The translations under genes were made by a program, and so were the position numbers. A stretch of 57,463 nucleotides of DNA, taken from contig NC_069000.1 of assembly GCF_001194135.2 (NCBI RefSeq), positions 42,538,327 through 42,595,789 of the forward strand. Reading direction: 5' to 3'. This document shows, one piece after another, positions 3,464-29,630 of this stretch (positions within the stretch are counted from its first letter, which is position 1; each line of letters opens with the position of its first letter). This DNA comes from Octopus bimaculoides (Eukaryota). Under the pieces are notes generated by a model. That model did no database searches, had not been told where the DNA came from, and saw only the letters and a list, made by a program, of their open reading frames with translations.

Positions 3464-3592
3464 ATGACAAACGTTTTCACTCGACAATTTATTCAAGCAT
3501 GTCATTTAAGGTTGGCTTTACGGCACCAATTCTCTCCTCTGTTGTCACGCAGCATCGTTCGTGTATCTTCCCCGCTTCTCGCAAAGAAAATG
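3464..3592 (+). CDS. PCBD: Candidate distal first coding exon of PCBD, encoding a mitochondrial-presequence-like peptide (MTNVFTRQFIQACHLRLALRHQFSPLLSRSIVRVSSPLLAKKM)
   Basis: ATG at 3464, 43 codons in unique CpG-containing sequence, no D/E, 5 R + 2 K. Ends in ATG followed by GTTCGT (phase 0), in frame with exon 27851. The donor is non-optimal and no transcript evidence is available. Confidence 0.6.
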
Positions 3593-4519
3593 GTTCGTAT
3601 TTTCTACAAAATTCCTTGGAATTATTTATTTATCAAATTTAATATACTTACATTTTTTAATCATACGTCTAAGTTTCTGAAAGGATATTAATAATACTAA
3701 TATTTGTTTTTATTCTAATTCACTTCAGTTCCTTTACTTGTGCCATTGTACATGCACTTGCATTAAACCTGTTTGGTCGATTTTTATAAAACGTCCGAGC
3801 GAAAATTATCAACTAAAAACAAACATTTTATACAGCTTATATATATTCATGTTTTCTTACACGTCCTTAATATTAAAAGCATAAATGACAATTTATGACA
3901 AACAGTTTTTGGAACCTTTACGGTAGACTCAACTACAATTTTAAAATTTCACAAATTATTTCCGTGGTTACTTATGGGTCAAAAGCTGATAAATAACACT
4001 AACAGCGGTATTTATTCTAAGAGTCGATTTTTTAAATATTTAACTATAAGTAAATGCTTAAAAAACAAAAGAAGAAAGTAAAAAAACAAACAAACAAACA
4101 GACACAAGAGCCACATCAATCTTCGGATTCTGGCTTTGAAAGTCTTAAATTCAAAACATTAAAAGAAGAATAGAAGAGGGGAAAAAAATCAATATTCTTT
4201 TTATAGGGGGACAGATTGAAGTTTGAAGAATAAGTTACGTAGCAGTCCACTTTTGCTCGTCGATCTAACCGTTGTTATTATTAGGTTTATACTTCCGGCT
4301 TTTTACGCCCCGGGTTCAAATTTCGTCAAGGTCAACGTCGCCTTTCACGCTTTCACTGCTGAGAAAATAAGTCGTTGTAATTATCGAAAGCCCCACCCTT
4401 TAAATTGTTGGCTTTGTGCCAAAATAATAAACACAAGACACACAGAGCTGCGCTCGGTAGTGCAGTAGAAGCACGTGATAATAATAAGACCACTTAATAA
4501 TAATAATAATAATCGTTTC

Positions 4520-4890
4520 TACTAAAGGTACAAGGCCTGAAATTTTGTGGGGAGGGAACTAGTCGATTACATCGACCCTAGAGTTTCACTAGTACATAAG
4601 TTACTGACCCCGAAAGGACGAAAGGAAAAGTCGCCGTAGGCGGAATTTAACTCTGCCAGCTCGCCACCTTAATTATTCTTTTCTGCTCTAGGTACCAGTC
4701 CCGAAACTTTGGCGGCAGAGGCCAGTCGATTACATCGACCCCAGCACGCAACTGCTACTTAATTTATCGACCCCGAAAGGATGAAAGGCAAAGCCGACCT
4801 CGGTGGAAGTTGAACTCAGGACGTAAAGACAGACGAAATACCGCTAAGCATTTCGCCCGGCGTGCTAACGATTCTGCCAGCTCACCGCCT
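4520..4890 (-). mobile_element. SINE-like family B copies (also about 2195-2400, 2455-2630, 47090-47265, 47420-47585)
   Basis: Recurrent body ...GTCGACTTTGCCTTTCATCCTTTCGGGGTCGATAAATTAAGTACCAG... with a tRNA-like head. Confidence 0.75.
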
Positions 4891-5574
4891 TAATTTTTAT
4901 CATCATCATCATCATCATCAGTCTGTTTTTCATGCTGGCATGGGTTGGACGGTTTGACAGAAGCTGACCAGCTGAAAGACTGTTCAGGCTCCGTGTCTGT
5001 TTTGGCATGGCTTCGGGTGCTTTTTATGTGGCACCAGCACTTACGGGCCTGCTAGATTAGGGACGCTCAGCCGGAGTGGGTTGCAGAGGACAGGCCTGAA
5101 TGCAAGAACATCCACACTTTTACTTTATCTTGACATGTCTTGTCTAGCCCAGCACACCACCAGGGATCCTGGTCCCCTATCATCCCTTCTGTGAATCCCA
5201 CCGTCTGTTGATCATTTCTCAACACTTCATCCCACATCTTCCTGGGTTTACCCCTTCCACATGTTCTGTACTGCCCCTCCGTTATGAAAGAAGATCACAA
5301 AATCATCTTTCATCATAATGAGAGGGGCCTTGTGCTATGGGACGGTGTAGTTGCTCTGCTTTATCCGGAGGATCTTCCCTCCCTCCCGCAGCTTTGAGAT
5401 CCTTAGGTAGGCAACCATTGTTGCCCACCTTCCTTCTTTTCCCCTTTTTTCGAGGAGGTCTCCACCTCCTCGACTGCCTCCATCTCTCCCTCCAAAGAAG
5501 GAGGGGGGTACTACTTTTATTAACTGCTCCAGGACCCTACTTTGGTCCTGGGGCATTGACAGGTGCCATCATCA

Positions 5575-5890
5575 ACAACAGATGGTGGTATGCCCTAAAG
5601 AAAGCAATTAACGCAGAATCGGTTAGGTACAGTGAGGCCCTAGCATTAGACCAAGATAGAATTGAGGGAAACCTAGTTAAGAAATTAGAAGAAGCACTTA
5701 GAACTGGCATTGTGTCCAACGTACTGGCTGCAAGGTTGACCCTCGACCAACACTTCAATGCCAAACACAAAGGATACGTTGTCAGAGCTAGGATGCGTAC
5801 TCTGAGGAACGAAGGAGTTGGAGCCGCCCGAGTAGCGGAGGAGCAACGAGGCAACAGAGCCACCATTAGATCACTTACAGATGAACAGGT
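5575..5890 (+). mobile_element. LINE ORF2 fragment (L1/Tx1-like, endonuclease-RT linker)
   Basis: Translation WWYALKKAI...AKHKGYVVRARMRTLRNE...TIRSLTDE resembles the WW..K...KGA.IRSR...E...I..L.D linker. It ends at a T-rich tract. Confidence 0.6.
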
Positions 5891-6047
5891 GCATGAATTA
5901 CTTTCCTTTTTTTTCTTTTTCTTTTTTTTCTCCCTTTTTACTACCGATCCCTTTTGATCAATTTTCTTATTCTTTTTTCTAAAAGAAAAGCTTTACAATT
6001 GTATTTGTCCCCTCTGTGTACAGCCCTGAGTGGCTAATAAAAGAAAG

Positions 6048-6048
6048 T

Positions 6049-6081
<33 letters not shown>

Positions 6082-6104
6082 CTATCTGTCTATCTATCTA
6101 TCTG

Positions 6105-6143
<39 letters not shown>

Positions 6144-6275
6144 GTCTATCTCTATCTGTCTATCTATCTGTCTGTCTCTCTGTCTATCTTTGTCTGTCTG
6201 TCTATCTATCCATCCATCCATCCATGTATCTATCTACCTACCTGCCTGCCTGCCTACTTGTCTGTCTGTCCGTCC
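6048..6275. repeat. Compound (TCTG)/(TCTA) tetranucleotide microsatellite
   Basis: Directly visible. Confidence 0.95.
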
Positions 6276-6393
6276 ATTTAAGAATTTGTGTTGTAAGATT
6301 TCTGAAGTGAAACTGTTAAAGTAGATATTCTTATGTATTGGGATGGTTGTTTTCCTTTCTTTATTTTTTATATTTTGCTTTTGCTAAATAATC

Positions 6394-6435
<42 letters not shown>

Positions 6436-7090
6436 ACTTGCACAAATATACACTATTGATTCTGCTTAATTGCACAGCCTCGTTAGAAATTCTTATGCAG
6501 TGAACTGACATTCACATTGTAGGTGATACAAGAGTTCATGTCATTCTCACTAGTCAGGTATTGTGGCTGTGTCTTGCATGTCTATTGGTTCCTTGTAAGA
6601 CCAGACTGAAAAGTCTTTTTCACTTTGTTTTCTGCACACTTCATTCACCTTTGTTCCACTCAGTCCAAGCTCTTTTTATTTTCATTGATATGTGTTGCCA
6701 TAAAAATATATATGTATATCATCATCATCATTGTCGTCGTTTAACGTCTGCTTTCCATGCTGGCATGGGTTGGATGGTTTAACTGAGGACTGGTGAGCCA
6801 GAAGGCTGCACCAGGATCCAATCTGCTCTGGCAAAGTTTCTACAGCTGGATGCCCTTTCTAACACCAATCACTCCGAGAGTGTAGTGTGCTTTTATGTGC
6901 CACCAGCATGAGGGCCGGTCAGGCAGTTCTGTCTACTATGACCATGCTCAAAAGGTGTTTTCTATGTGCCACCGGCATGAGAGCCAGTCCGGCGGCACTG
7001 ACAATGATCACACTTGAATGTTGTTTTTCACATGCCAACATTCGAGCGTGGTTGTTGCCAGTGCCACCGGACTGGCTCCCGTGCTGGTAG

Positions 7091-7156
<66 letters not shown>

Positions 7157-7299
7157 GTATGTATATATATGGCATATATATACACAAAATGTGGTGAATA
7201 AATTGTCATCTAAATTATGCAAAAATGAAAATAATACTGGCATCTCATTCTAACATATATTTACCAAAATTACATAAAAATATCTTGAAATACTAAAGA

Positions 7300-8210
7300 G
7301 TAAATTTATTCAATAAAATCGCCATTGGCTTCAACCACGGCCTCCAGACAACTTCGGCATCTCCTGCAACTCTTCTGGACAGTCTCCTTGTTAAAGTTGG
7401 TGAATGCTGCCATAATCTTTGCCTTCAGTTTTGTTGGTCTTTCTCACAACTGTGCCCCACACAGTAATCAGGTGGTGGGGTTGCAGTCTGGAGGGTGGCC
7501 AAATGTTAGGGATGATGTGGTCTGATAGTCATGACTGGGTTCTCTTGCTTGTGTGACATGGTGCTAAGTCATATTGCCAGACATAGGGTCTTCCATCAGA
7601 CACCCACTTCACTCAGGGCAGCACCACTTCCTCCAGGCCCTTGAGCCTGAGGTCATGTGGGAAGATGAATGGAGGCATAACGTTGCCATCACTAGTGATC
7701 ACTCCAAACACCATGATATTGACTGGATGTTTGATTTTTATCACTCTCGGTACATGTTTTGGGGACACAGCAAGCCAATGGTTGTTCTGTGTGTTCACCA
7801 GCTGATCCTAGCAGAAATTTTTCTCATCTGAGAAAAACCCAAGCATGTTCAGTTGTAAGGGATGCTTGAGTTTGTTCAAAAGCTTTGTAGCATAGTCTTT
7901 CCTTTTGTCCATGATGGCTTGGGATAAAAATTGGCCCTTTCCCATCTTGTATGAGGAATATTGAATGTCTTCATGCACCACCTACCTGATAATAAACTCA
8001 GACACTCCCATGTTCCTGGTGATGGACCTGATTGACTTGGAGGGATCGTTGGCAATCATGGTCTGGATCTCACCAACAAATTCAGGAATTCTTTTCTTAT
8101 GAGAATGACCAGAGGGAATTTTCTGAGCTGCTGCACTTTGGTAATCACCATTAAATTCATGGAACAGACTAGCATTACAACTGCTGTGGTTCCCAGGGAA
8201 CAGCTGATAA
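7300..8210 (-). pseudogene. Decayed Tc1/mariner-superfamily transposase
   Basis: Minus-strand fragments QNNHWLA...KHPVNIMVFGVITSDGNVMPPFIF, YVWQ.D.APCHTSKRTQ, IWPP..., NKETVQKSC...LEAVVEANGDFIE, with frameshifts and stops. Confidence 0.85.
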
Positions 8211-8586
8211 TATACTGTAATTTAGATAATATACTGTAGAACATATGGTTTGTTTTTCTATGTATGTGTTGGATTATATATTACTTTGTTAATTATTATG
8301 TTTATTAAAAATTGGAAAATCATTAGCAACAGCTGAATACAGGAATTTGTAACGTTCTGTGTGCACATGTGTGTGTGTGTGTGTGTGTGTGTACATGTGT
8401 ATATATATAATCCACATACGAGAATGTGTACATACCAACAGGGCCTCAGCATATGTCCTTTATATACTGAAGAAATCGATGTTTCACATGGATTAAAACC
8501 AAAAGCTTAAGATTATGTCTCTCAAGCTTTGCCTTTGGCTTTCAACTCCTGATGTATATAGATTGCGGTACCATTGTCTCTTGTCT

Positions 8587-8629
<43 letters not shown>

Positions 8630-9635
8630 TCTTTTACTCTTTTACTTGTTTCAGTCATTTGACTGCGGCCATGCTGGAGTACCACTTTTAGTCGAGCAAA
8701 TTGACCCCAGGACTTATTCTTTGTAAGCCTAGTACTTATTCTATCGGGCTCTATTTGCCGAACCGCTAAGTTACGGGGACGTAAACACACCAGCATGCTA
8801 CTGGCACAGGTGCTAGTTATGTGACACCAGCATCAGCCATATTGCGTCCAACTAAACAGGCAAGCTCATACATTTGTGTTCTTGTTTGTGTCTATTTTAT
8901 GCCTTGCAACTTAGCAGTTGAATAAAGAGGGAATGATAAAGTACCAGAGCTTAGATTAAGTGCGAGGGTCAGTATGATCTATGAAATCCTTGAAGGCAAT
9001 GCCCCAGTGTGGCCACTATTCACTGCTCGAAATCAGTGTAAGAGTGAAAGAATATATACATGTCCAGGCATGGTTCCTTCCCAGCCCCATGGTTCTGGTT
9101 TCAGTCCCACTACCTGGTACCTTGGACAAATGTCTTTTATTATAACCTTGGACTGACCAAAACCTTGAGAGTGGATTTGGTAGATGGAAACTGAATGAAG
9201 CTTGTGTGTGCGTGTGCCTGTACCTGCATTTGTCCCCTGCCACAGCTTGACAACAAGTGTAACATCCCTGTTACATAGCAGTTCAGCTAAAGAGACTGAT
9301 AGAATAAGTACCAGGTTTTGAAAAATTAAGTAGTGGGGTTGATTCGTTCAACTGAAATTCTTGAAACCAGAGCCCCAGCATGGCCATACGCCGATGACTA
9401 AATCAAATAAAACAAAGATACACATGTCTATCTATGTATGTTTCTCTGTCTGTTTGTCTGTCTCTCTGTCCCATTTGTCTCTGTCCGTTTGTCGGTCTGT
9501 CCGTCTGTCGGTTTGTCCGTCTGTCGGTTTGTCCGTCTGTTCATTTGTCTGTTTGTCCACCCATCCATCCGTCTGTCTGTCTGTCAGTTTGTCTGCCTCT
9601 CCTTTTGTCTACCTGTCCGTTTGTCTATGTCTACT

Positions 9636-9667
<32 letters not shown>

Positions 9668-9677
9668 NNNNNNNNNN

Positions 9678-9719
<42 letters not shown>

Positions 9720-10129
9720 CTCTGTCTCTCTATATCTCTCCCTCTATCTCTTTCTCTCTCTCTCTGGATACAGATAGAGAGACAGACACACACACACACA
9801 CACACACACACATGCACATTAGGCATCTGATCGATACTCATCACCTCCACCACCTCCTTTCCCTTGTTCTGTGCCTCCTGACACACAATCAGTTTACCAA
9901 TATTCCTTCCATGACTACAATGGTGCCAACCATTATCAAAGCATCAACCATCTCCTTCTGTATTCTACGAACCTAACATTCTGTCTGCGATGATCATCAT
10001 CACCGATCACCAACTGCCAAAGTCTCCCCACCCCACCCCATCTACCTCCCACCCTCACATGGCAACACCCCTTCCACCTGCCCCCCTCCCGCTTTCTGGT
10101 TAATTGTTTTGTCTTTGTGTTATTACAAC

Positions 10130-10221
10130 TGCTATACCTGTTGCTGCTGCAGTTGCCGCTGTTGTTACTGAACCTACTACTACCACCGCTGCCACTACTA
10201 CTAACATCACTACCACCACTG

Positions 10222-10264
<43 letters not shown>

Positions 10265-10466
10265 CGCTACTACTACTGCCACCACCACTACCACCGCTAC
10301 TACTACCACCACTACTATCATCACTAGCACTGCCACCACCACTACTATCACCGCTACCACTGCCACCACTACTACTACTACCACTACTATCGCCGCCACC
10401 ACCTCCANNNNNNNNNNTACTATCACCGCTACCACTGCCACCACCACCACCACCACCACCACCATC

Positions 10467-10506
<40 letters not shown>

Positions 10507-10680
10507 TCATTGCTGCTACCACCGCCTTCGCATTCGATACCACCACTACAACGATGATCATCAAGCTACATACCGTTACAGCCATCACCACCAATACTAC
10601 TACTGCTACTACTCTTTGTACAACTACCATCATTACCGTGCTACACACTGTTACGACCACCAACACCACCACCAATTCTT
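10130..10680. repeat. Degenerate (ACT/ACC)n trinucleotide tract
   Basis: Directly visible. It produces the spurious poly-Thr/Val/Pro ORFs. Confidence 0.92.
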
Positions 10681-10773
10681 CCTCGTTAAGTTATTACGTG
10701 ACTTAGGTAATTGCATGGTCAATCTAGTTCATGCTTTTACATGCTCACTCACACAAATATGTGTGTGTGTGTG

Positions 10774-10838
<65 letters not shown>

Positions 10839-11553
10839 NNNNNNNNNNNNNNNNNNNNNNNNNNNNNNNNNNNNNNNNNNNNNNNNNNNNNNNNNNNNNN
10901 NNNNNNNNNNNNNNNNNNNNNNNNNNNNNNNNNNNNNNNNNNNNNNNNNNNNNNNNNNNNNNNNNNNNNNNNNNNNNNNNNNNNNNNNNNNNNNNNNNNN
11001 NNNNNNNNNNNNNNNNNNNNNNNNNNNNNNNNNNNNNNNNNNNNNNNNNNNNNNNNNNNNNNNNNNNNNNNNNNNNNNNNNNNNNNNNNNNNNNNNNNNN
11101 NNNNNNNNNNNNNNNNNNNNNNNNNNNNNNNNNNNNNNNNNNNNNNNNNATATATATGTATGTGTATATATGAATATGTATGTATACATATACATATATA
11201 TGTATGCATGTATATGAATATGTATGTATATATATATATGTGCGTGTATATATGAATATGTATGTATACATATACATATATATATGTATGTGTATATATG
11301 AATATGTATGTATACATATATATATATATGGATGTGTATGAGTGGTTGGCGTTAGGAAGGGCATCCAGCTGTAGAAACTCTGCCAAATCAGACTGGAGCC
11401 TGGTGTTGCCATCCGGTTTCACCAGTCCTCAGTCAAATCGTCCAACCCATGCTAGCATGGAAAGCGGACGTTAAACGATGATGATGATGATGATGATGAT
11501 GATGTATGTGTATACATATATGCACATGCATATGTGTATATGTATGTAATATA

Positions 11554-11585
<32 letters not shown>

Positions 11586-12619
11586 CATATATATACATAT
11601 GTTCATACAAAAGCATACACACACACACACACACATATTTATAAATATATTTACACATGAGTGTGTGCATATCAATGTCTCTATGCATACTCATTTATAC
11701 ACACGCACACACACACACACACACATATACATTCATATATGTATATACACACATGTACCAATACACATTCTAGCATGTGCATTCATATATATACATACCT
11801 AAGCATATGTATATCCGTCGATGCATCTATCCACGCACACACACACACACACACAGGTGTGTAGTTTTTTTGTCTCCGATCTTGTTATACAAGTATATAC
11901 AGATTTCTGCTTGCAATGACATCACTACTACTGCTATTGCTACTACTACTGTCACAGCCACCTGTTGTACTATTATTACTTGCCAACATCATCACCAGCA
12001 TCTCGCCGACCACCATCATAGTCATCGTCATCATCATCATCATCACCAACATCGTCGCAAACCTTTAAACTACCACCACCACCATCACCACCACTGTCCT
12101 CATCATCACCACCACCACCACCACCACCACCATTGACAGCAGCAGTCGTTTCAGTTTTGTGAGTCGAGGATGCTGGGACGCACAGACTTCATCCATCTCT
12201 GCTGCGCTGCTGTGTTTGACCTGACAAATACCATCATGGATGTTGGTGTGAGTTGGTGGCTTTAATGCTTGTTCTTATTCAAGACGTTGTTCAACGGGTT
12301 GTCGTAGTGGTGGCGATGAGGGTGGGGTTTTTTGTAGTTATGGTTACTGTTTCATGAGTGTTGTAGTACTAGTAGTAGTAGTAGTAGTAGTAGTAAACAT
12401 AGTGTTTGCTTCGTTATTGTTGTTGTGGTTAGTTCTTGCATTGATGTGGTCATAATGTTTGTATTGGCGTGATTGTAGTGTTGTTGTTGTGGTGGTGGTG
12501 GTGGTGGTGGTGGTGGTGGTTGTAGTCGACTTTCTTGCTGTTGTTGTTGTTACTACAGATGTTGTCATTAACACTGCTTGGTTTCTTGCAGTTGCTGTTG
12601 TTGTTATTCCTTTCGGTGG

Positions 12620-12719: not shown

Positions 12720-12752
<33 letters not shown>

Positions 12753-14642
12753 TCTTTATGCTCTGAGTTCAAATTCTGCCGAGGTCGACTTTGCCTTTCA
12801 TCGTTTCAGGGTTGATAAATTAAGTACCAGTTATGTACTGGGGTCAATCTAATTAACTGGCCCCCTTCCCCAAAATTCCAGGCCTTGTGCCTAGAGTAGA
12901 AAAGGATTATTATTATTATTATTGTTATTTCTTTATGCTCTGAGTTCATATTCTGCCGAGGTCAACTTTGCCTTTCGTCTTTACGGGGTCGATAAATTAA
13001 GTACCAGTTGAGTACTGGGGTCGATGTGATTGACTATCGCCACCTCCCCTTAAATTCCAGGCCTTGTGCCTTTAGTAGAAAGGATTATCATCATCATGCA
13101 AGGCAGTGAGCTGGCAGAACCGTTAGCACGCCAGGCGAAATGCTTAGCGATATTTCGTCTGCCGCTACGTTCTGAGTTCAAATTCCATCGAGGTCGACTT
13201 TGCCTTTCATCCTTTCAGGGTCAATGAATTAAGTACCAGTGAAACATTGGGGTCAATGTAATCGACTTGTTTCCTCCCGCCAAATTTCAGGCCTTGTGCC
13301 TTTAGTAGAAAGGGTTATAATAATAATAATAATAATTAATATGTTGTTATTATCATCGTTATGAAGGTGGTGAGCTGACAGAATCGTTAACACATCAGAC
13401 AATAATGCTTAGTGACACTTTGTTCTGAGTTCAAATTCCACCAAGGTCTGTTTCACCTTTCTTTCACTTTTTTTCTACTGGTCGATGAAATAAGTACCGG
13501 TTACACACTGGGGTCGAAGTAATCAACTACCCCCTCCCCCCCAAAATCCCAGGCTTTGTGCCTAGAGTAAATAGGATCATTATTATTATTATTATTGTTG
13601 TGAGTCGGAGAGAAGGAATTTGAGAAGGCACTTGCTAATGAGGGATTTCAGGGAAATCTCAGACAGTGGGGTTTCTTGATAATTCCTAGAGGTGTTCCTG
13701 TACCAGGAGGGCCACATTTATCATCTCCCCCCCTTTTTAATATCTTACCTTTGTATGCTATGCATATATCTCTTTTTTTTACTAGTGTATTACATGTATA
13801 TGTGTTTTTTTTTATCATCTCATTATTATATGTAACCCCCCACACACACACACACACTTCATGTCTGTCTCTGTATTGTCCCCTTATCCTTCGCCCTTGT
13901 GGCAAATGAATTAAACCATTATTATTATTATTATTATTATTATTATGGTGGTGAACTGGTAGAATTGTTAGCACGCTGGACAAATTGCTTGGCAGTATTT
14001 TGTCACTACATTCAGAGTTCAAATTCTGCAGAGGTCGACTTTGCCTTTCATCCTTTCAGGGTTGATAAATTAAGGAACCAGTTGCGTACTGGAGTCGATG
14101 TAATTGACTGGCTCCCTTCCCAAACATTTTGGACCTTGTGCCTAGAGTAGAAAAGATTATTGTTGTTATTGTTATTAAGGCAGTGAGCTGGTAGAGCCAC
14201 TACGATGGCAGACAAGATGCTTAGTGGCCCACTTTTCGTCTTTGCATTCTGAATTTGAAATCAACTCGGGTTCACTTTGCCTGTCATCCTTTCAGAGTTG
14301 ACAAAATAAATACCCGTTAAGTACTGGGGGTTGATGTTAAATATTTCCCCTTCCCCTCAAAAACTGCTAGTTCTGTACCAAAATTTGCAATCATCATCAT
14401 CATCATTATCATTGTTGTTATTATCTAAGGCAGTGAGCTGGCAGAATTGTTAGCATGCCAGGTGAAATGCTTAGTGGCTTTTTGCCTGCTGCTACATTCT
14501 GGGTTCAAATTCCACTGAGGTCAACTTTGTCTGCTATTCTTTCAGGGTCAATAAATTAAGTACCAGTTACACACTGGGGTCGATGTAATCAATTAATCCC
14601 CCTCCTCGTAAATTTCAGGCCTTGTGCCTATAGTAGAAAGAC

Positions 14643-19198: not shown

Positions 19199-19238
<40 letters not shown>

Positions 19239-21149: not shown

Positions 21150-21515
21150 GTTTCTGTCCTTAAATCTCTCTCATATTTTCTGTTCTTTTTCTTCTTTCAT
21201 TTTCTCTCTTCTGTCTTTATCTCTCTCTCTCTGTCTTTCTCCCTCCCTCCCTTTCTTTCTCTTCTATTTTCTATTTCTTTTTCCTTTTCTCTTTGTCTCT
21301 TTTCTCTCTTTCTTCCTTCCTTTATCTTCATTTCTTTCTTTCTTTCTCTTTGTTTCATTTCTCTCTTTGTTTCTTTCTTTCTTTCCCTGTCTTTCTTTTC
21401 CCTCTCTGTTTTCTCTCTCTCTGTTTTCTCTCTCCTTGTTTTTTCTCTCTCTCTCTGTTTCTTTCTTTCTTCATCTCTCTCTCACTCTCCTCTCCCCCCT
21501 CTCTCTACCTTCCCC
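21150..21515 (+). repeat. Long polypyrimidine (CT-rich) tract
   Basis: About 360 nt of almost only C/T next to an N gap. Confidence 0.9.
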
Positions 21516-21919
21516 CTTACACTCATTGTCACCCAGCCACTTCTAACATTTGTTTCTCCCATCTCTCTTTATTAACCATTACACCCTCCTACCCTCACAT
21601 ATAATGCCCTTACCCCCACTCAGCAAATACCCTTTCTAGGGTGGGGGCAGCATCTCAGGTCATACCAGAGGCAAACCTACTCACAATTCCCACAAGTTCG
21701 GAGAGCGGGTGGGGTGGGGTGTGAAGATCCTACTTATTATCCCTCTTCTGCCTGACATCCACCCTTTTGTCACATTCTCTGCCTTAAAATCCACCCCAGT
21801 TCTACACACCTCCACCCTGTCTGTTTCAAGACTACCCTCTATTACTCCCCCCCACCACTACCATCACCATCTTCCTCACCACTTTGTCATGAAATTGTAG
21901 TCAAGTGTTCTTGTTTGTA

Positions 21920-22786
21920 NNNNNNNNNNNNNNNNNNNNNNNNNNNNNNNNNNNNNNNNNNNNNNNNNNNNNNNNNNNNNNNNNNNNNNNNNNNNNNNNN
22001 NNNNNNNNNNNNNNNNNNNNNNNNNNNNNNNNNNNNNNNNNNNNNNNNNNNNNNNNNNNNNNNNNNNNNNNNNNNNNNNNNNNNNNNNNNNNNNNNNNNN
22101 NNNNNNNNNNNNNNNNNNNNNNNNNNNNNNNNNNNNNNNNNNNNNNNNNNNNNNNNNNNNNNNNNNNNNNNNNNNNNNNNNNNNNNNNNNNNNNNNNNNN
22201 NNNNNNNNNNNNNNNNNNNNNNNNNNNNNNNNNNNNNNNNNNNNNNNNNNNNNNNNNNNNNNNNNNNNNNNNNNNNNNNNNNNNNNNNNNNNNNNNNNNN
22301 NNNNNNNNNNNNNNNNNNNNNNNNNNNNNNNNNNNNNNNNNNNNNNNNNNNNNNNNNNNNNNNNNNNNNNNNNNNNNNNNNNNNNNNNNNNNNNNNNNNN
22401 NNNNNNNNNNNNNNNNNNNNNNNNNNNNNNNNNNNNNNNNNNNNNNNNNNNNNNNNNNNNNNNNNNNNNNNNNNNNNNNNNNNNNNNNNNNNNNNNNNNN
22501 NNNNNNNNNNNNNNNNNNNNNNNNNNNNNNNNNNNNNNNNNNNNNNNNNNNNNNNNNNNNNNNNNNNNNNNNNNNNNNNNNNNNNNNNNNNNNNNNNNNN
22601 NNNNNNNNNNNNNNNNNNNNNNNNNNNNNNNNNNNNNNNNNNNNNNNNNNNNNNNNNNNNNNNNNNNNNNNNNNNNNNNNNNNNNNNNNNNNNNNNNNNN
22701 NNNNNNNNNNNNNNNNNNNNNNNNNNNNNNNNNNNNNNNNNNNNNNNNNNNNNNNNNNNNNNNNNNNNNNNNNNNNNNNNNNNNNN
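21920..22786. other. Assembly gap (largest of many N runs, e.g. about 10839-11149, 16677-16988, 20806-21133, 37656-38184, 38527-38880, 45285-45729)
   Basis: N runs, mostly flanked by (AT)n microsatellites. Confidence 0.99.
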
Positions 22787-23541
22787 TATATTTTCAGTTG
22801 TAAGATCCATTAGAATCTAGGAATTTCAATGTATAGGGCACCAGGAAGGGCAAGGTACTGGGCTAGTAATATTTGGCTGTTGTTAGCTGGATGGATGCTG
22901 TAATTATGCCTTTGAGTAGACCAGAACCTCCTGAATGGATTTGGTTGACAGAAACTGAAAAGAAGCCCCCACCCCCTATATATATTGTTGTGCCTGTGTA
23001 TGTACGTATGTGTGTGTGTGTGCGTACTTGTTTCATGCCACCACTTGTCATCAGGTGTTTGTGTGTTTATGTCCCTGTAACTTTGCAAAAGGTAGTGATA
23101 AAATAAGTGTCAGTCTTAAAAAGAATCTAATTCGCCTTAAAGAATGTTCATAGGGGTGCCCCAGCATGGCCACAGTCTGCTGACTGAAACAAGTAAAATG
23201 TGTGTGGGGAGGGTATGACTGTGTAGTATCTTGGGCAAGTGTCTTCTACTATAGCCTCATGCCGGCCAAAGCTTTGAGTGGATTTGATAGTTGGAAACTG
23301 AAAGAAGCCCATCGTATGTACATATATCTGTGTTTGTGCCCACTCACCATCACCGCTTGACAACCGGCGTTGGTGTGTCTACGTCCCCGTAACTTAGCGG
23401 TTCGGCAAAAGTAACCGATAAAATCAGTACTAGACTTAAAAAATAAGTTCTGGGATAAATTTGTTCAACTAAAGCCCTCCAGCATGGCCGCAGTCAAATG
23501 ACTGAAAGAAGTGAAAGAACAGATTAAAAGAAAAAAATTTA

Positions 23542-23577
<36 letters not shown>

Positions 23578-24119
23578 TATATATANNNNNNNNNNNNNNN
23601 NNNNNNNNNNNNNNNNNNNNNNNNNNNNNNNNNNNNNNNNNNNNNNNNNNNNNNNNNNNNNNNNNNNNNNNNNNNNNNNNNNNNNATATATATATATAAC
23701 CTTGTACACATGAGAAAAAGTGATTGGCTAGGCACTTTCCTTCGCCTACCATCCTTGTTATCTGTTACTTGCATATTACCACCGTCGTCAAGGCAGATAT
23801 CTTTACCGCCAACCCAACGAATGCTTTATTCCTTCCCCAACCTCTTATATGTGTATATACATAGATATATGTGTGTGTGTGTTCATGTATGTATACACGA
23901 ACACACACATGCACGCATTCACAGTGACAAGACCAAAGAGAGAGAGAGAGAGAGAGGGACAGATAGAAACTTGTTGCTTCACGCAAGAAAACAAACGCAA
24001 GCCTGGCCCGCGCTGTGACACACAATTACTCCGGTGCCCGTTTTGTTTGTACAAACGTAATCGTTCTCTGATTTCGCTTTCCCTGTGATTTCTCCCCCTT
24101 TTTTGTCTCCATCCAGAAT

Positions 24120-24122
24120 ATG
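24120..24122 (+). CDS. PCBD: Candidate proximal first coding exon of PCBD (ATG only)
   Basis: AATATG|GTATGT, a strong phase-0 donor, preceded by unique CpG-containing sequence. Vertebrate PCBD1 exon 1 also contributes only the Met. Confidence 0.65.
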
Positions 24123-24513
24123 GTATGTCCAAATAACCCTTCACTTTTGTTATTCTATTATTCACTTCTCACACAATCTGTGTTTAACGTTTTTTTTATT
24201 TTTATTTTTTAAAATTTTTTATTGATTTAATTTTTTTACGAGTTTTTTTGTTTTGTTTTGTTTTGCTTTTCTTTTCCATAACCGCTCTTTTAAATTCTTT
24301 CTCATCCGTTGAGCCAGACCGATGCCAAACTAGAGCACTTTAAGCATTTCCTACAATAGTCTCAGGTCGATTAATACCTTGCGTTTATATGTGTTATATA
24401 TATATATTTCTATATAGGCGAAAGTAAAGAATATGTACAATCGCTGTTTAAGGGTTTAGGGTTAGGGTTTTTGTCACGCCGAAAACGGGTGGTGTGCCTA
24501 TTCTTTACCTTCA

Positions 24514-24562
<49 letters not shown>

Positions 24563-24944
24563 TGTGTATTTCTTCTATCTTAATGAATAAAAATTCTTCT
24601 GATAGAATAAATGGGTTAATAGAAACCAATGTAGTAAAGAACACAAAATAACTGTGGTTTAGTTCCTGTTTTTAAGGCAGGAACTCCTTGAAATTTTGGG
24701 TATTTGAGTATATTTAAGAATTTAAGGATTGGAGAAAACGCATGTTATAATTGCATACTTTATTCTTACATATGTTTCAAAGGATTACAACCTGTGTGAT
24801 CCATAGGGATCTTTGATATTAAAATTGTAACCTTCTCATCAGGGAAAGCATGGGAATCATCTTAAACGTAAGACATTATGACCGATTATGAAAACAATAG
24901 ATGGATAAGGTTATGACTTGATTCATTATATATATAGTAGCACT

Positions 24945-25302
24945 CTGTCTTTTATGACGACGAGGGTTCCAGCTAATCCGATTAACAGAACAGCCTGCTC
25001 GTGTAATGAACGTGCAAGCGGTTGAGCACTCCACAGACACGTGTGCCCTTAACGTGGTTCTCATGGAGATTCAGCGTGACGGGGTGTGACAAGGCTGGCC
25101 CTTTGAAATGCAGGTACAACAGAAACAGGAAGAAAGAGTGAGAGAAAGTTGTGGTGAAAGAGTACAGCAGGATTCGCCACCATCCCCTGCCGGAGCCTCG
25201 TGGTGCTTTAGGTGTTTTCACTCAATAAACACTCACAATGCCCGGTCTGGGAATCGAAACCGCAAATCCGCTGCCCTAACCACTGAGCCATTGCGCCTCC
25301 AC
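24945..25302 (-). mobile_element. tRNA-headed SINE family D (also 34425-34805, 44778-45166; partial at about 16420-16640, 25330-25510, 57200-57270)
   Basis: Minus strand starts GTGGAGGCGCAATGGC(C/T)CAGTGGTTAGGG...TTCGATTCCCAGACCGGGC. Copies are highly similar. Confidence 0.85.
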
Positions 25303-25624
25303 ATGTGTGTGTGAAGGCACGTGGTACATTGTGTCCTTGAGCAAGACTCTCTTTCCCGTTGCTCCAGTCCACTCAGCTGGTGAAAATGAGTTGTACCCGT
25401 AATTCAAAGAGGCCACTCTTGCCACACTCTGTGTCACGTTGAATCTCCCTGAAAACTACGTTAAGGGTGCACGTGTCTGTGGAGTGCTCAACCACTTGCA
25501 CGTTAATTTGTATTAACACCTGGATGTTAATACATACATACGTATGTATATATATGTGCAAGTATGTGTGTTTATTTTTGTATTCGAATTTATTTCATGT
25601 AAAAAATTGTCTTATTTCGATAAT

Positions 25625-25980
25625 TTCTACTAATCACTGACGTCTATTCAGTTGAAAACAGTTAGCGCTGTAACGGTGTATATCGTATTAATCCCCTAAC
25701 CCTAACCCTAACTAGACTGTTAACCGTAACCGTAACCCTAACCCTAACTCTAGAATCCGAACTCTAAAATTGTTACACACATAGATACGCACAGCGTAAT
25801 TTATTATATAAACAATATATGCGTATAAATTACGATTAAACCGGATGAAATATGTTACAGGGAATAACATTTTTATGACCGCCCAGCAGTAACTCTATTA
25901 AGCTGAATAGACGTCAGTGATTGGTTGAAATTACAGAAATACGACAACTTTAACATGGAATAACTTGCGAATTCCTTTTT
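25625..25980. mobile_element. Non-autonomous inverted-repeat element containing (CCCTAA)n
   Basis: AATCACTGACGTCTATTCAG (about 25630) is inverted at CTGAATAGACGTCAGTGATT (about 25905). Internal CCCTAA/CCGTAA units. Confidence 0.65.
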
Positions 25981-27009
25981 NNNNNNNNNNATGACCGCCC
26001 AGCAGTAACTATTCAGCTGAATAGACGTCAGTGATTGGTTGAAATTACAGAAATACGACAACTTTAACATGGAATAACTTGCGAATTCCTTTTTTTTGTT
26101 AAGAAGACTAAGAGTAAAAGATGTTTTATATGACACATTCTACCAGTATCCGAAGTTTCAAAGTGTTTCGTTAAGAAAATACTGGTGCCTCCGTTTTAAA
26201 ATAGATCCTATATATATATATATATATATGTGTGTGTTTGTGTGTGTGTGTTTGTGTATAGCATGGCCCGTGCCCCAGCATGGCCGCAGTCTAATGACTG
26301 AAACAAGTAAAGGTGAAAGAAGGTATGTCTGTGTTACTGGTTGTCTGAAAGATGTAAGGTTTGTGTGTTTTGAGTTAAGAGAAGATTGTTTGTTGTAGGT
26401 TGTTGTCTTAGTGGTGGAATGTTGATATTAACTCTTAATTAAATACGTCAAGTAAATAAAACATTTTCCACTTAAAAATTTAGGTTAATTGTTGGTGGAG
26501 TGTGTTTAGGATGGCGTTGTGTTTTTAGTTTGGAGTGTGGTGGAGTAAACCTATCAACATTTAACTGAGGGGTTGGTGGTTCAAATCCCTTGCCTTTCAG
26601 CTGCCAAATTATATCTTAGTTTCGTGAAGGCACATAGCTTAGTGGTTAAGCTGTTGCACACACAATCACTAGATCATGGGTTCAATTCCCTGAGTGGGCA
26701 GCATGTTGCATTCTTGATCAAAACACTCCATTTCGTGTTACTCCAGTCCCCACTTTCAATCAAGGCAGGGAATGTTGGCCTGCTCACCTAGCCAGCAGAC
26801 TGGCATCAATCGAAGGCTAAAGTGCATTGTGATCAGTGATGTGTAACATCTAATAGCCTGGTCAGTCACATGATCACATGATATCTTAGTCTTAAGATAT
26901 TGATGATGTAAGCATTAATTTCTAGAATAATATTACAGGGCTGGTATTAGGAACATAAAAGAAGCAGAATATTTTGGCCATATATGTCGTTGTAATGCCC
27001 ACAAGGATT

Positions 27010-27307
27010 TTCGAGCGAGATCGTTGTCAGTGCCCCTGGACTGGCTCTTGTGCAGGTGGCACGTAAAATACACCATTTTGAGTGTGGCCATTGCCAGTAC
27101 CGCCTGACTGGCCTTCGTGCTGGTGGCACGTAAAAGCACCCACTACACTCTCTGAGTGGTTGGCATTAGGAAGGGCATCCAGCTGTAGAAACTCTGCCAA
27201 ATTAGATTGGAGCCTGGTGTAGCCATCCGGTTGCACCAGTCCTCAGTCAAATCGTCCAACCCATGCTAGCATGGAAAGCGGACGTTAAACGATGATGATG
27301 ATGATGA
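27010..27307 (+). mobile_element. SINE family C ending ...GGAAAGCGGACGTTAAACGATGATGAT (many copies, e.g. 6720-6960, 11335-11500, 28205-28548, 41065-41330, 43490-43700, 51945-52320)
   Basis: Near-identical repeats throughout the window ending in a (GAT)n tail. Confidence 0.85.
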
Positions 27308-27850
27308 TTTTTGTTTCCAGAGTGAAATGGAATTCACTGAGGCAGATTTGTTTTTTTTTTTCCATGGCCTAATGCCCTTTCTGCTGAAAATTCTCACCTG
27401 TTCCCAACAAGCAAGGTATTTTTTACTCGTGGCTGGACATGTTTCCACACAAGATTGGAAACAAACTACACCACTTATATGACTGTGACACTCATTTACA
27501 ACTAATGTGCAATGTCAAGACAAAGGCACAAAGAAACACACACAATGGGATTCTTTCAGTTTCCATTTACAAAATCCACTCACAATGCTGTGGTTGATCT
27601 GGGGCTGTAGTAGAAAACACTTGACCTAGGTGCCACGCATTGGGACTGAACTCGGTACACCATATTGTTGGGAAGTGTACTTCTTAGCCACGCAACTACA
27701 CCTGTACCTAGAATATAAATATATGAACCAAACAAATCATTTTACCCTTCTGCCATTGTTTTCCATTTCATTTTCATTTCAATATGTAAAAACTTGGGTT
27801 TTTTTTTTTTTGTAAATTTTAAAAGAAATTTTTATTTATTTATTTTACAG

Positions 27851-27985
27851 GCAGCTGAGAAAACATCAAAACTGACCAGTGAGGAAAGAGATGATGTCCT
27901 TGCTCCTTTGATGAAAGAAGGATGGACCCTTGTAAAAGGTAGAGATGCCATCTACAAGGAATTCGTCTTCAAGAACTTCAATCAG
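27851..27985 (+). CDS. PCBD: PCBD exon (AAEKTSKLTSEERDDVLAPLMKEGWTLVKGRDAIYKEFVFKNFNQ)
   Basis: ttttacag acceptor, GTAATT donor, 135 nt. Matches the PCD/DCoH N-terminal half (GRDAI.K.F.FK.FN). Confidence 0.95.
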
Positions 27986-28180
27986 GTAATTCATACCCTG
28001 TCTGTTTTTCCTTGCAACAGAAACATTTTTTTGATATATCTCAGCCTTGACAGAGAAGATAATGTCAGGAACCCACAGCTGAAAGGGGGTTATGTACCCC
28101 CTAATTACAATGTCCAGCTGCATATCGCAAAGACAGTTCTTCAGAAATTCCAAGAATCGAGAAACAAGATTCTATTTTAA

Positions 28181-28720
28181 CCCTTTAACATTCAGATTAC
28201 CAACGTCGCCTTCCTGGTACTTGTGCCAGTGGCACGCAAAAAGACATTCGAGCGAGACCGTTGCCACTACTGCTGGACTGGATCCTGTGCAGGTGGCACG
28301 TAAAATACACCATTTTGAGCATGGCCATTGCCAGTACCACCTGACTGGCCTTTGTGCCGGTTGCACGTAAAAGCACCCACTACATCCTTGGAGTGGTTGG
28401 CGTTAGGAAGGGCATCCAGCTGTAGAAACTCTGCCAAATCAGATTGGAGCCTGGTGTAGCCATCTGGTTCACCAGTCCTCAGTCAAATCATCCAACCCAT
28501 GCTAGCATGGAAAGCGGACGTTAAACGACGATGATGATGATGATGATTGTTTTGAATTAATCCTGGATTATCTCAGTGCTTTTAGGTTTCAATAAGGGGA
28601 TTATTTATTTTCAGAACGGTGTAGCAGGGGACATGTGAGAGGCTGGTTTCTGGCTGTTTTGAACATAATAAAACAGGTAGAATGTTTGGATTGGATTTCG
28701 TTGGTTTAAATGTTAAAGGG
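28181..28720. mobile_element. piggyBac-like MITE with a nested SINE, in a PCBD intron
   Basis: TTAA|CCCTTTAACATT...AATGTTAAAGGG ends. A family-C SINE is inserted at about 28205-28548. The right-hand TTAA is not intact. Confidence 0.5.
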
Positions 28721-28793
28721 ATGATGTTGGTTGGTGAGTTTGTTTGAGTAGTTTTCATCACAATGCCTTCCTTTCTGGTTCTTTCTTCAACAG

Positions 28794-28874
28794 TGTTTCG
28801 GTTTCATGACTAGAATTGCTCTAATGGCTGATAAGATGGACCATCACCCAGAGTGGTTTAACGTCTATAATAAG
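28794..28874 (+). CDS. PCBD: PCBD exon ([27 protein letters not shown])
   Basis: ttcaacag acceptor, GTAAGT donor, 81 nt. Contains the signature [12 protein letters not shown] with catalytic His residues. Confidence 0.97.
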
Positions 28875-29528
28875 GTAAGTATCTCTGCCTATTTGTCTGT
28901 CTGTCTCTCTCACAGTCATGAGATATGAGTTCGATTCCCAGACCGGGCTGTGTATTGCATTCTTGAGCAAGACACTTTATTTCATGTTGCTCCAGTTCAC
29001 TCAGCTGTAGAAATGAGTTCTGATGTCACTGGTGCCAAGCTGTATCGGCCTTTACCTTTCCCTTGATAACATCAGAGGCATGGAAAGGGAAGGCTGGTAT
29101 GCATGGGCAACTACTGGTCTTCTATATTGTTTATTTCTTTTGCTTGCTTTAGCCAATTAGATTGTGGCCATGCTGGAGTACTGCACTGAAACTTTTAGTC
29201 AAATAAATCAACCCCAGTACTTCTTTTTTAAGCCTGATGCTTATTCTGTCGGTCTCTTTTGCCAAACTGCTAAATTACAGGCTTCTTTCAGTTTCCGTCT
29301 ACCAAATCCACTCACAAGGCTTTGGTAGGCCCAAGGCTATAGTGGAAGACACTCACCCAAGGTGCCACACAGCAGGACTGAACCTGAAACCATGCGGTTG
29401 GGAAGCAAGCTTCTTACCACACAGCCATGCTTGTGACTTTGTGGAAGATTTTGAAATCTTAATTGTTTTATTGTCATGATTTTACAATTGTTTTAAAATT
29501 ATAATTATGCTTTATCTCTGGATTCCAG

Positions 29529-29630
29529 GTTCAAATCAAGCTGAGCACTCACGAATTCAATGGTCTTTCTCATCGAGACATTCGTCTGGCGACCTTCATT
29601 GAGAAAGCATCTAAATCAGTTTTCGACTAG
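29529..29630 (+). CDS. PCBD: PCBD last coding exon (VQIKLSTHEFNGLSHRDIRLATFIEKASKSVFD*)
   Basis: ttccag acceptor, LSTHE..GLS.RD motif, TAG at 29628-29630. Total 106 aa with the proximal ATG. Confidence 0.95.
   Translation, partial: VQIKLSTHEFNGLSHRDIRLATFIEKASKSVFD

What the first reader, a model, noticed from the sequence alone, without database searches (positions are those of the whole stretch)
3464..29630. One PCBD gene with two alternative first exons: a mitochondrial presequence isoform and a cytosolic/nuclear isoform
Seen: a unique 43-codon exon about 24 kb upstream (MTNVFTRQ...LLAKKM; net +7, no acidic residues, rich in R/S/L) ends at a phase-0 ATG|GT. A separate ATG|GTATGT lies at 24120. 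Both join in frame to AAEKTSKL at 27851. Known: PCBD/DCoH recycles BH4 and is the HNF1 dimerization cofactor. Vertebrates have PCBD1 (Met-only exon 1) and PCBD2 (N-terminal extension ending in Met at the same junction). Inference: here one locus makes both forms by alternative promoters, which may reflect the state before the vertebrate duplication.
Basis: partly seen in the sequence, partly recalled or inferred. Interest (0 to 1): 0.75.

Follow-up and report, generated by a model that had tools for sequence, protein, structure and literature searches.

The report
Octopus PCBD gene with alternative starts

Summary
Exon 1a (3464-3592, 43 codons, ends ATG|GTTCGT) and the ATG|GTATGT at 24120 both join in frame to exon 2 (27851). 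They give 148-aa and 106-aa PCBD proteins.

Both are exact matches to RefSeq isoforms X1 and X3 of Octopus bimaculoides. RefSeq also has X2 (131 aa).

All N gaps are intronic. The locus is collinear with the gap-free O. sinensis assembly across every gap.

The exon 1a to exon 2 junction appears in spliced RNA-seq contigs of another cephalopod. The Met-only exon at 24120 has no direct transcript support. It is not more conserved than its intron and has no counterpart in Argonauta.

The long form is not special. 94 of 97 long animal PCBDs end a basic leader in Lys-Met. Oyster, amphioxus, lemur PCBD2 and skink PCBD1 all have the intron right after that Met. Human PCBD2 is published as mitochondrial when full-length and nuclear/cytosolic when started at that Met.

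So the ancestral state is one exon with two in-frame starts, not two promoters. Overall the gene is ordinary and already annotated. The one open item is the strongly constrained 26-aa exon of unknown function.

The parts
3464..3592 (+). Alternative 5' coding exon 1a: 43 codons, a basic leader with no acidic residues, ending in the junction Met (RefSeq isoform X1, 148 aa). The 5' UTR start is unknown; a related cephalopod has at least 81 nt of UTR.
   Evidence: Orthologous exons in O. sinensis and Argonauta. Spliced to exon 2 in RNA-seq contigs L001-L006.
3593..3598 (+). Donor site GTTCGT (T at +3, off consensus). O. sinensis has the same; Argonauta has GTAAGT.
3499..3501 (+). Out-of-frame AUG inside exon 1a (agcATGt). 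Its 33-codon ORF runs past the junction AUG into exon 2. Kept in the three octopods; absent in the outgroup cephalopod, oyster, amphioxus and lemur PCBD2.
12170..12247 (+). Alternative 5' coding exon ('middle exon'), 26 codons MLGRTDFIHLCCAAVFDLTNTIMDVG, donor GTGAGT at 12248 (RefSeq isoform X2, 131 aa). A possible acceptor AG at 12138-12139 would allow use as a cassette exon after exon 1a, in frame in this species.
   Evidence: Conserved in O. sinensis, Argonauta and the RNA-seq cephalopod. pN 0.03-0.10 against pS 0.64-0.89. L011 shows exon 1a spliced to it.
24120..24122 (+). Candidate Met-only coding end of a third 5' exon (ATG|GTATGT), the likely but unproven source of RefSeq isoform X3 (106 aa).
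   Evidence: Best donor among the 21 ATG|GT sites between exon 1a and exon 2. ATG|GTATGTCC kept in O. sinensis. No extra conservation, no Argonauta counterpart, no transcript seen.
27851..27985 (+). Common exon 2 (AAEKTSKL...FKNFNQ), acceptor ttttacag.
28794..28874 (+). Exon 3 ([27 protein letters not shown]), with the catalytic His pair.
29529..29630 (+). Exon 4 (VQIKLSTHEF...KSVFD) with stop TAG at 29628-29630; 3' UTR follows.

Best explanation
The window holds the single PCBD gene (pterin-4a-carbinolamine dehydratase / DCoH) of Octopus bimaculoides. It has three common coding exons (27851-29630) preceded by alternative 5' coding exons.

Exon 1a is the ancestral bilaterian exon 1. It encodes a basic, acid-free leader that ends in a Met, followed at once by a phase-0 intron. 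This is the same design as mammalian PCBD2. By that homology, the 148-aa form is most likely imported into mitochondria (inferred).

The 106-aa form starts at the junction Met and is the cytosolic/nuclear enzyme (inferred). It can be made in two ways. One is initiation at the junction AUG, which has a strong context (A at -3, G at +4) against a weak first AUG (C at -3). The other is a separate transcript whose first exon ends in ATG, most likely the one at 24120. In octopods an out-of-frame AUG inside exon 1a should intercept scanning ribosomes, which would favour the separate-transcript route (inferred).

A third, cephalopod-restricted 26-codon exon (12170-12247) gives a 131-aa form with a conserved non-mitochondrial N-terminus of unknown role.

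Shown: exon structure, identity to RefSeq isoforms, conservation, the exon 1a-exon 2 and middle exon-exon 2 junctions in mRNAs of a related species, and the ancestral position of the intron.

Inferred: localisation of each form, and use of the 24120 exon.
For: - Exact matches to RefSeq X1, X2 and X3. The same trio is annotated in O. sinensis and, in a separate GenBank deposit, in O. vulgaris.
- Pfam Pterin_4a. The catalytic His residues are invariant in a 41-sequence alignment. The AF2 core has pLDDT above 90.
- Exon order holds in two gap-free assemblies, with collinearity across all gaps. No other gene is called inside the locus in O. sinensis or Argonauta.
- Spliced mRNA contigs carry AAAATG|GCAGCTGAA (long form) and GTCGGC|GCAGCTGAA (131-aa form).
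- 94 of 97 long PCBDs have an inner Met within 12 residues before the conserved KL, preceded by Lys in 78. The median leader is 37 aa with 7 K+R and 1 D+E.
- Exon 1 ends ...ATG|GT in amphioxus, three oysters (one with a GC donor), lemur PCBD2 and skink PCBD1.
- Human PCBD2 GFP fusions: annotated form mitochondrial, form started at Met28 nuclear/cytosolic (PMC12718117 Table S2).
- Start-codon contexts and intervening AUGs.
- Exon 1a evolves fast (pN 0.26, pS 0.39 against Argonauta) but keeps its composition, as presequences do.
Against: - No octopus RNA-seq, CAGE or localisation data could be consulted.
- No mitochondrial-targeting predictor was available. My hydrophobic-moment test did not separate the leader from shuffles. 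It did not do so for the validated human PCBD2 leader either, so it is uninformative.
- The exon 1a donor GTTCGT is off consensus.
- The exon that gives RefSeq X3 its Met could not be read: the look-up of the 106-aa product returned nothing.
- The region around 24120 is no better conserved than the surrounding intron, and part of its upstream side is an assembly gap.
Confidence: 0.8

Rival explanations
1. The ATG|GT at 24120 is a chance site. The 106-aa protein comes only from the junction AUG of exon-1a transcripts (leaky scanning, or transcripts starting inside exon 1a), as in human PCBD2.
For: - The dual-AUG exon is ancestral, and the junction AUG has the stronger context.
- In the RNA-seq cephalopod every '106-aa' call sits on an exon-1a transcript.
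- The 24120 region is at background conservation and has no Argonauta counterpart.
- There are 21 ATG|GT sites in the intron.
Against: - Three annotations (RefSeq for two species, and the GenBank records of O. vulgaris) list a 106-aa isoform as a separate product. That needs a transcript lacking the first AUG.
- 24120 has the only near-consensus donor of the 21 sites and is kept in O. sinensis.
- Octopod exon 1a carries an out-of-frame AUG whose ORF overlaps the junction AUG, which should hinder leaky scanning.
Confidence: 0.35
2. One reading: two promoters with two first exons is the ancestral state, later split between vertebrate PCBD1 (Met-only exon) and PCBD2 (leader exon).
For: - PCBD1 and PCBD2 arose by an early vertebrate duplication (PMC1890551).
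- Both keep the junction Met at the end of exon 1.
- Some invertebrate annotations list long and short isoforms.
Against: - No Met-only exon is conserved in Argonauta or among three oyster genera. Oyster and amphioxus intron 1 is only 0.5-3.4 kb.
- PCBD2 still yields both forms from one exon.
- PCBD1's exon 1 (UTR plus ATG at the same junction) is explained more simply by loss of the upstream AUG.
Confidence: 0.12
3. The 43-residue extension is not a mitochondrial presequence. It could be another signal, or neutral sequence translated only because it is upstream.
For: - The amphipathicity test was inconclusive.
- The sequence diverges fast.
- There are no octopus localisation data.
Against: - The ORF is kept open, with start, length and basic acid-free make-up preserved across cephalopods and across phyla.
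- It is positionally homologous to a leader shown to target GFP to mitochondria.
Confidence: 0.1
4. Assembly artefact: exon 1a was scaffolded next to PCBD by mistake across the N gaps.
For: Nine N runs lie between exon 1a and exon 2.
Against: - Same exon order in gap-free O. sinensis and Argonauta.
- Collinear matches bracket every gap.
- mRNAs join the exons in a related species.
Confidence: 0.01

Closest known systems
RefSeq gene models of Octopus bimaculoides PCBD (XP_052831102.1 X1, XP_052831103.1 X2, XP_052831104.1 X3), with the matching trios in O. sinensis and O. vulgaris
   Same: Identical proteins (148, 131 and 106 aa). The finding's two forms are X1 and X3.
   Different: Nothing in the proteins differs. 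The annotation is a computed model with no stated function for the N-termini. I could not see its exon table, so the exon behind X3 stays unconfirmed.
Vertebrate PCBD2 (DCoH2)
   Same: Exon 1 encodes a basic leader ending in Met, with a phase-0 intron right after it (lemur locus). The full-length human protein is mitochondrial, and the form from the junction Met is nuclear/cytosolic (PMC12718117).
   Different: PCBD2 has no AUG between its two starts, so one mRNA can give both forms. Octopod exon 1a has an intervening out-of-frame AUG, and the octopus gene has extra alternative 5' exons. The leader sequences themselves are not alignable.
Vertebrate PCBD1 (DCoH, PHS)
   Same: The initiator Met is the last codon of exon 1, at the same junction (skink locus). 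Alternative predicted N-termini all join before AGKAHRL. The 106-aa octopus form is its counterpart in length.
   Different: PCBD1 lacks the conserved leader. Whether the octopus 24120 exon is related to PCBD1 exon 1 cannot be tested, since only 3 coding bases are shared.
Dual-localised mitochondrial/cytosolic enzymes made by alternative start codons or alternative transcription starts (GARS1, TRNT1/CCA1, FH and others, as surveyed in PMC12718117)
   Same: One gene and two N-termini; the longer one carries the mitochondrial signal.
   Different: Here a third, non-mitochondrial N-terminus is added, and promoter choice may replace leaky scanning.

Membership tests
PCBD / DCoH (Pfam PF01329 Pterin_4a) | Significant match to the Pterin_4a domain over its full length | tested here: met
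   E = 4.1e-31, 107 bits against a cut-off of 26, profile positions 2-90 of 91.
PCBD / DCoH (Pfam PF01329 Pterin_4a) | Conserved catalytic histidines (DHHPEW pair and the STH histidine; naming these as the catalytic residues is from my own knowledge) | tested here: met
   H88, H89 and H106 of the 131-aa form are invariant in 41 sequences.
PCBD / DCoH (Pfam PF01329 Pterin_4a) | Compact alpha/beta fold | tested here: met
   The AF2 core has pLDDT 83-96 with order H-E-H-E-E-H. No fold search was run.
PCBD / DCoH (Pfam PF01329 Pterin_4a) | Dehydratase activity and HNF1 binding | not testable with these tools
   Needs enzyme and binding assays.
Mitochondrial matrix-targeting presequence | N-terminal, 15-50 residues, rich in Arg/Lys, Ser/Thr and Leu/Ala, with few or no acidic residues | tested here: met
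   43 aa, 7 K+R, 0 D+E, 7 S+T. The same holds in O. sinensis and Argonauta; the outgroup cephalopod has 11 K+R and 2 D+E.
Mitochondrial matrix-targeting presequence | Amphipathic helix | tested here: inconclusive
   The maximum hydrophobic moment is no higher than in shuffles (fraction 0.26). The same holds for the validated human PCBD2 leader, so the test lacks power.
Mitochondrial matrix-targeting presequence | Positional homology to a leader shown to import a reporter | tested here: met
   Same exon and same intron junction as PCBD2. The human PCBD2 full-length GFP fusion is mitochondrial and the form started at Met28 is nuclear/cytosolic.
Mitochondrial matrix-targeting presequence | Import and cleavage in the organism | not testable with these tools
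   No TargetP or MitoFates was available, and no octopus localisation or proteome data.
Alternative first exons / alternative promoters | Mutually exclusive 5' exons spliced to a common exon 2 in mRNA | tested here: met
   Shown for exon 1a and for the middle exon in RNA-seq contigs of a related cephalopod and in the RefSeq isoforms. One contig (L011) also joins exon 1a to the middle exon, so they are not strictly exclusive.
Alternative first exons / alternative promoters | The same for the Met-only exon at 24120 | tested here: inconclusive
   It has the best donor of 21 sites and is kept in O. sinensis. No transcript was seen, it has no extra conservation, and Argonauta has no counterpart.
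Alternative first exons / alternative promoters | Separate transcription start sites | not testable with these tools
   CpG density was uninformative, because the peaks are SINE-like repeats. CAGE or 5' RACE is needed.
Dual-start (leaky scanning) exon | Weak context at the first AUG and strong context at the second in-frame AUG | tested here: met
   ccaATGa against aaaATGg in O. bimaculoides. O. sinensis and the outgroup cephalopod show the same pattern; in Argonauta the junction AUG has A at -3 but T at +4.
Dual-start (leaky scanning) exon | No AUG in any frame between the two starts | tested here: not met
   An out-of-frame AUG at +35 with an overlapping 33-34-codon ORF is present in O. bimaculoides, O. 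sinensis and Argonauta. The feature is met in the outgroup cephalopod, oyster, amphioxus and lemur PCBD2.

The most novel reading that the evidence does not exclude
Two linked readings are not excluded. First, cephalopods added to the ancestral two-start PCBD gene a third N-terminus, a 26-residue peptide (MLGRTDFIHLCCAAVFDLTNTIMDVG) under purifying selection as strong as that on the enzyme core. It may send a pool of PCBD to a third place or partner, for example a membrane anchor through S-palmitoylation of the Cys pair. Second, octopods acquired an AUG that blocks leaky scanning, and so shifted production of the cytosolic form to a separate Met-only first exon.
Probability: 0.25. Interest if true: 0.5.

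Novelty: already known. Interest (0 to 1): 0.25.

Why it matters
It matters little as a discovery. The gene, its exons and all three protein isoforms are in the public annotation, and the mitochondrial versus nuclear/cytosolic split of PCBD forms is published for human PCBD2.

Two things come out of the check. First, it corrects the evolutionary reading. The leader-plus-junction-Met exon is shared by molluscs, amphioxus and mammalian PCBD2. PCBD2 therefore keeps the old design, and PCBD1 is the derived, leaderless copy. Second, it flags a short cephalopod-restricted N-terminal exon that is unusually well conserved and has no known role.

Why an enzyme of tetrahydrobiopterin recycling is sent into animal mitochondria at all is still open. 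The breadth of conservation seen here suggests the question is general, not specific to vertebrates.

Tried and rejected
- CpG density as a promoter mark: the peaks coincide with SINE-like repeats, not with the three 5' exons.
- Hydrophobic-moment test for an amphipathic helix: no power, since even the validated human leader fails it.
- Look-up of the 106-aa product to learn which exon RefSeq uses for X3: not on record.
- '106-aa' RNA-seq contigs as evidence for a Met-only exon: rejected. L016-L020 carry all of exon 1a and the gene caller merely chose the inner AUG. L013-L015 have other sequence joined inside exon 1a.
- Search for the 24120 exon in Argonauta: only microsatellite ATG|GT sites.
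- A candidate ATG|GTATGT in Crassostrea intron 1: not conserved in Ostrea or Saccostrea, so taken as chance.
A 40-aa query found no representative sharing words. This says little, because isoforms are clustered under their longest relative.
- tblastn of the middle exon against amphioxus, oyster, lemur and skink loci: nothing.
- AF2 of the 131-aa form: residues 1-30 have pLDDT about 50 and no secondary structure.
- Identifying the RNA-seq species from run accessions in the literature: no paper found. By PCBD-core distances it lies outside Octopus + Argonauta.
- The ORF called after the PCBD stop in those contigs is not conserved.
- tblastx to place the neighbouring CN_hydrolase gene in the window returned only repeats.
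- Scaffold misjoin: rejected.

Full report
**1. What is in the sequence**

- An ATG at 3464 opens 43 codons (MTNVFTRQFIQACHLRLALRHQFSPLLSRSIVRVSSPLLAKKM). The last codon is ATG (3590-3592), followed by GTTCGT.
- A second ATG at 24120-24122 is followed by GTATGT.
- After ttttacag, exon 2 starts at 27851 with GCA GCT GAG AAA (AAEK) and ends at 27985.
- Exon 3 is 28794-28874. Exon 4 is 29529-29630, with TAG at 29628-29630.
- All introns are phase 0. Either upstream ATG joins in frame, giving 148 or 106 residues.
- The leader has 7 K+R, no D/E and 2 His. It occurs once in the window.
- By composition alone it is only mildly unusual. 2.2 % of stop-free 43-codon stretches of this window are acid-free with at least 7 basic residues.

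**2. The gaps**

The span contains nine N runs. Three were not on the program's list: 21920-22786, 23586-23685 and 25981-25990.
- All nine lie in introns, so no reading frame crosses a gap.
- Order and contiguity were tested against two assemblies with no N in this locus. Exon order 1a / middle exon / 2 / 3 / 4 is the same in O. sinensis (L022) and Argonauta hians (L021).
- A collinear chain of 43 blastn matches between the window and L022 brackets every gap.
- The 24-kb distance is an estimate; the same interval is 39.6 kb in O. sinensis.
- The gap at 23586-23685 stands for about 1 kb just upstream of the ATG at 24120.

**3. What it is**

- The 148-aa product is 100 % identical over its whole length to RefSeq 'probable pterin-4-alpha-carbinolamine dehydratase isoform X1 [Octopus bimaculoides]'. 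The window is therefore O. bimaculoides.
- The exact-sequence look-up shows three isoforms for the gene: X1 148 aa (XP_052831102.1), X2 131 aa (XP_052831103.1) and X3 106 aa (XP_052831104.1). The same trio is in O. sinensis RefSeq (149/131/106) and in the GenBank records of O. vulgaris.
- Pfam gives Pterin_4a at E = 4e-31. The catalytic histidines are invariant in a 41-sequence alignment. The AF2 core is confident.
- In O. sinensis and Argonauta no other gene is called inside the locus. The next gene downstream is a CN_hydrolase gene on the other strand.

**4.

X2 begins MLGRTDFIHLCCAAVFDLTNTIMDVG and then joins AAEK.
- The exon lies at 12170-12247 with donor GTGAGT, between microsatellites.
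- It is present with an intact start and donor in O. sinensis (identical) and Argonauta (MLSHRSDFIHLCCAAVLDLTNSIMDVG). It is also present in RNA-seq contigs of a further cephalopod, with 25 of 26 residues the same.
- Between O. bimaculoides and that species the exon has 11 synonymous against 2 non-synonymous differences (pS 0.64, pN 0.033). The enzyme core has pN 0.11. Against Argonauta the values are pN 0.091 for the exon and 0.077 for the core. So it is a protein-coding exon at least as constrained as the enzyme.
- Its net charge is about -2 and it has a hydrophobic stretch with a Cys pair. It is not a mitochondrial presequence.
- No trace of it was found in amphioxus, oyster, lemur PCBD2 or skink PCBD1 loci, nor in other protein representatives.
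- AF2 gives no confident structure for it.

**5. Transcript evidence**

The protein collection holds RNA-seq assemblies (Logan) of a cephalopod that lies outside Octopus + Argonauta by core distance. I could not name the species.
- Contigs L001-L006 carry a continuous 150-codon ORF with the junction ...GCCAAGAAAATG|GCAGCTGAAAAA. This is the orthologue of 3592>27851.
- Contigs L007-L012 carry the middle exon joined to exon 2.
- Five of the six middle-exon contigs (L007-L010 and L012) run 150-310 nt upstream of that exon into what looks like adjoining genomic sequence. This fits a separate start there.
- L011 instead joins exon 1a to the middle exon. That join is out of frame in that species. 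It would be in frame in O. bimaculoides if the AG at 12138-12139 is used.
- The '106-aa' calls in the same collection are not evidence for a Met-only exon. L016-L020 contain all of exon 1a, and the gene caller simply chose the inner AUG.

**6. The ATG at 24120**

Points in its favour:
- It has the only near-consensus donor among the 21 ATG|GT sites on this strand between exon 1a and exon 2.
- ATG|GTATGTCC is kept in O. sinensis.
- Three annotations list a 106-aa isoform, which needs a first exon that ends in ATG and lacks the upstream start.

Points against:
- Identity to O. sinensis around it (77-82 %) is no higher than elsewhere in the intron (75-93 %).
- Argonauta has no counterpart.
- No transcript was seen.
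- The look-up that could have given RefSeq's coordinates failed.

I put the chance that this is the exon behind X3 at roughly 0.6.

**7. How the long form compares with other animals**

The long form is the rule, not an oddity.
- Among the best hits, 97 proteins have 22 or more residues before the conserved KL. 94 of them have an inner Met within 12 residues of it, preceded by Lys in 78.
- The median leader is 37 aa with 7 K+R and 1 D+E. Four of the 94 are the cephalopod 131-aa forms.
- The phase-0 intron directly after that Met is shared. Examples are amphioxus ...AAAATG|GTGAGT, Crassostrea ...AAGATG|GTAAGT, Ostrea ATG|GTGAGT, Saccostrea ATG|GCAAGT, lemur PCBD2 ...GCCATG|GTGAGT and skink PCBD1 ...GGCATG|GTAAGT.
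- Alternative predicted N-termini of mammalian PCBD1 all join just before AGKAHRL.
- Exon 1a evolves quickly (pN 0.26, pS 0.39 against Argonauta) while keeping its length and make-up. That is how presequences behave.

**8. Published function**

- PMC12718117 (Mol Cell 2025), Table S2, lists human PCBD2-GFP fusions. The annotated 130-aa form is 'Mitochondrial, puncta'. The truncated form starting at Met28 (MSSGTHRL...) is 'Nuclear, cytosolic'.
- PMC12411192 treats PCBD2 as a mitochondrial gene.
- PMC1890551 reports one pcbd gene in invertebrates and an early vertebrate duplication into pcbd1 and pcbd2.

**9. Mechanism**

- The first AUG of exon 1a has C at -3 and A at +4. The junction AUG has A at -3 and G at +4. 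This is the classic arrangement for two products from one mRNA.
- The outgroup cephalopod, oyster, amphioxus and lemur PCBD2 have no AUG in any frame between the two starts.
- The three octopods share an out-of-frame AUG at +35 (A at -3). Its 33-34-codon ORF runs past the junction AUG.
- That should reduce short-form output from the exon-1a mRNA. It may be why a separate short-form transcript is annotated in Octopus. This last step is inference.

**10. Evolution**

- The bilaterian ancestor had one exon 1 with two in-frame starts.
- PCBD2 keeps it, and still gives both forms.
- PCBD1 lost the upstream start.
- Cephalopods added a 26-codon alternative exon.
- Octopus perhaps added a Met-only exon.
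- No conserved Met-only exon was found outside Octopus.

**11. Verdict**

- The gene models are already public, and the dual-localisation principle is already published for the human orthologue. Novelty is therefore 'already known' and interest is low.
- The residue of interest is the constrained 26-aa exon and the possible switch from leaky scanning to promoter choice in octopods.

Noticed in passing
window 54494-55591 (- strand): An intact single-exon ORF of 365 aa with a Pfam mTERF domain (E = 5.6e-18) and a long Asp-rich tail. It is probably a mitochondrial transcription termination factor family gene.
   Followed up: partly
window ~479-3349: About 2.9 kb present here but absent at the matching place in O. 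sinensis, ending 115 nt upstream of the exon-1a ATG. It is built of repeats, including an inverted duplication (391-1042 against 479-1130, 90.6 % identity). It may have displaced the upstream promoter region of the long isoform.
   Followed up: partly
window e.g. 2179-2397, 4673-4891, 13100-13311, 35667-35884, 47418-47581; many copies in L022: A SINE-like repeat of about 170-220 nt with many copies. These copies are the CpG-richest spots of the window (o/e 1.1-1.3 against a median of 0.48).
   Followed up: partly
window 21920-22786, 23586-23685, 25981-25990: Three further N runs lie inside the finding's span and were not in the program's list. The second hides about 1 kb directly upstream of the candidate Met-only exon.
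   Followed up: yes
L011 (Logan SRR29271469), bases 1-133: A transcript in which exon 1a is spliced to the 26-codon middle exon and then to exon 2. The middle exon can therefore also act as a cassette exon. The join is out of frame in that species. It would be in frame in O. bimaculoides if the AG at window 12138-12139 is the acceptor.
   Followed up: partly
L026 (Saccostrea echinata), end of exon 1: Exon 1 of the oyster PCBD gene ends ATG|GCAAGT, a GC donor at the conserved junction.
   Followed up: no
proteins P0197, P0211, P0220, P0225, P0242, P0253: Many vertebrate PCBD1 gene models carry unrelated predicted N-terminal extensions, all joined at the same junction before AGKAHRL. In two lizards the extension reads through exon 1 upstream of the canonical Met.
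   Followed up: partly
L001-L012, just after the PCBD stop codon: A 129-131-aa ORF is called in the 3' UTR of most of the RNA-seq contigs. It has no counterpart in Octopus or Argonauta and no Pfam hit, so it is taken as spurious.
   Followed up: yes
L021 27815-34063 and L022 62164-62854 (- strand): A CN_hydrolase family gene is the conserved downstream neighbour of PCBD in Argonauta and O. sinensis. By collinearity its 3' end should lie beyond about 35.7 kb in the window. I could not place its exons, because only repeats matched.
   Followed up: partly
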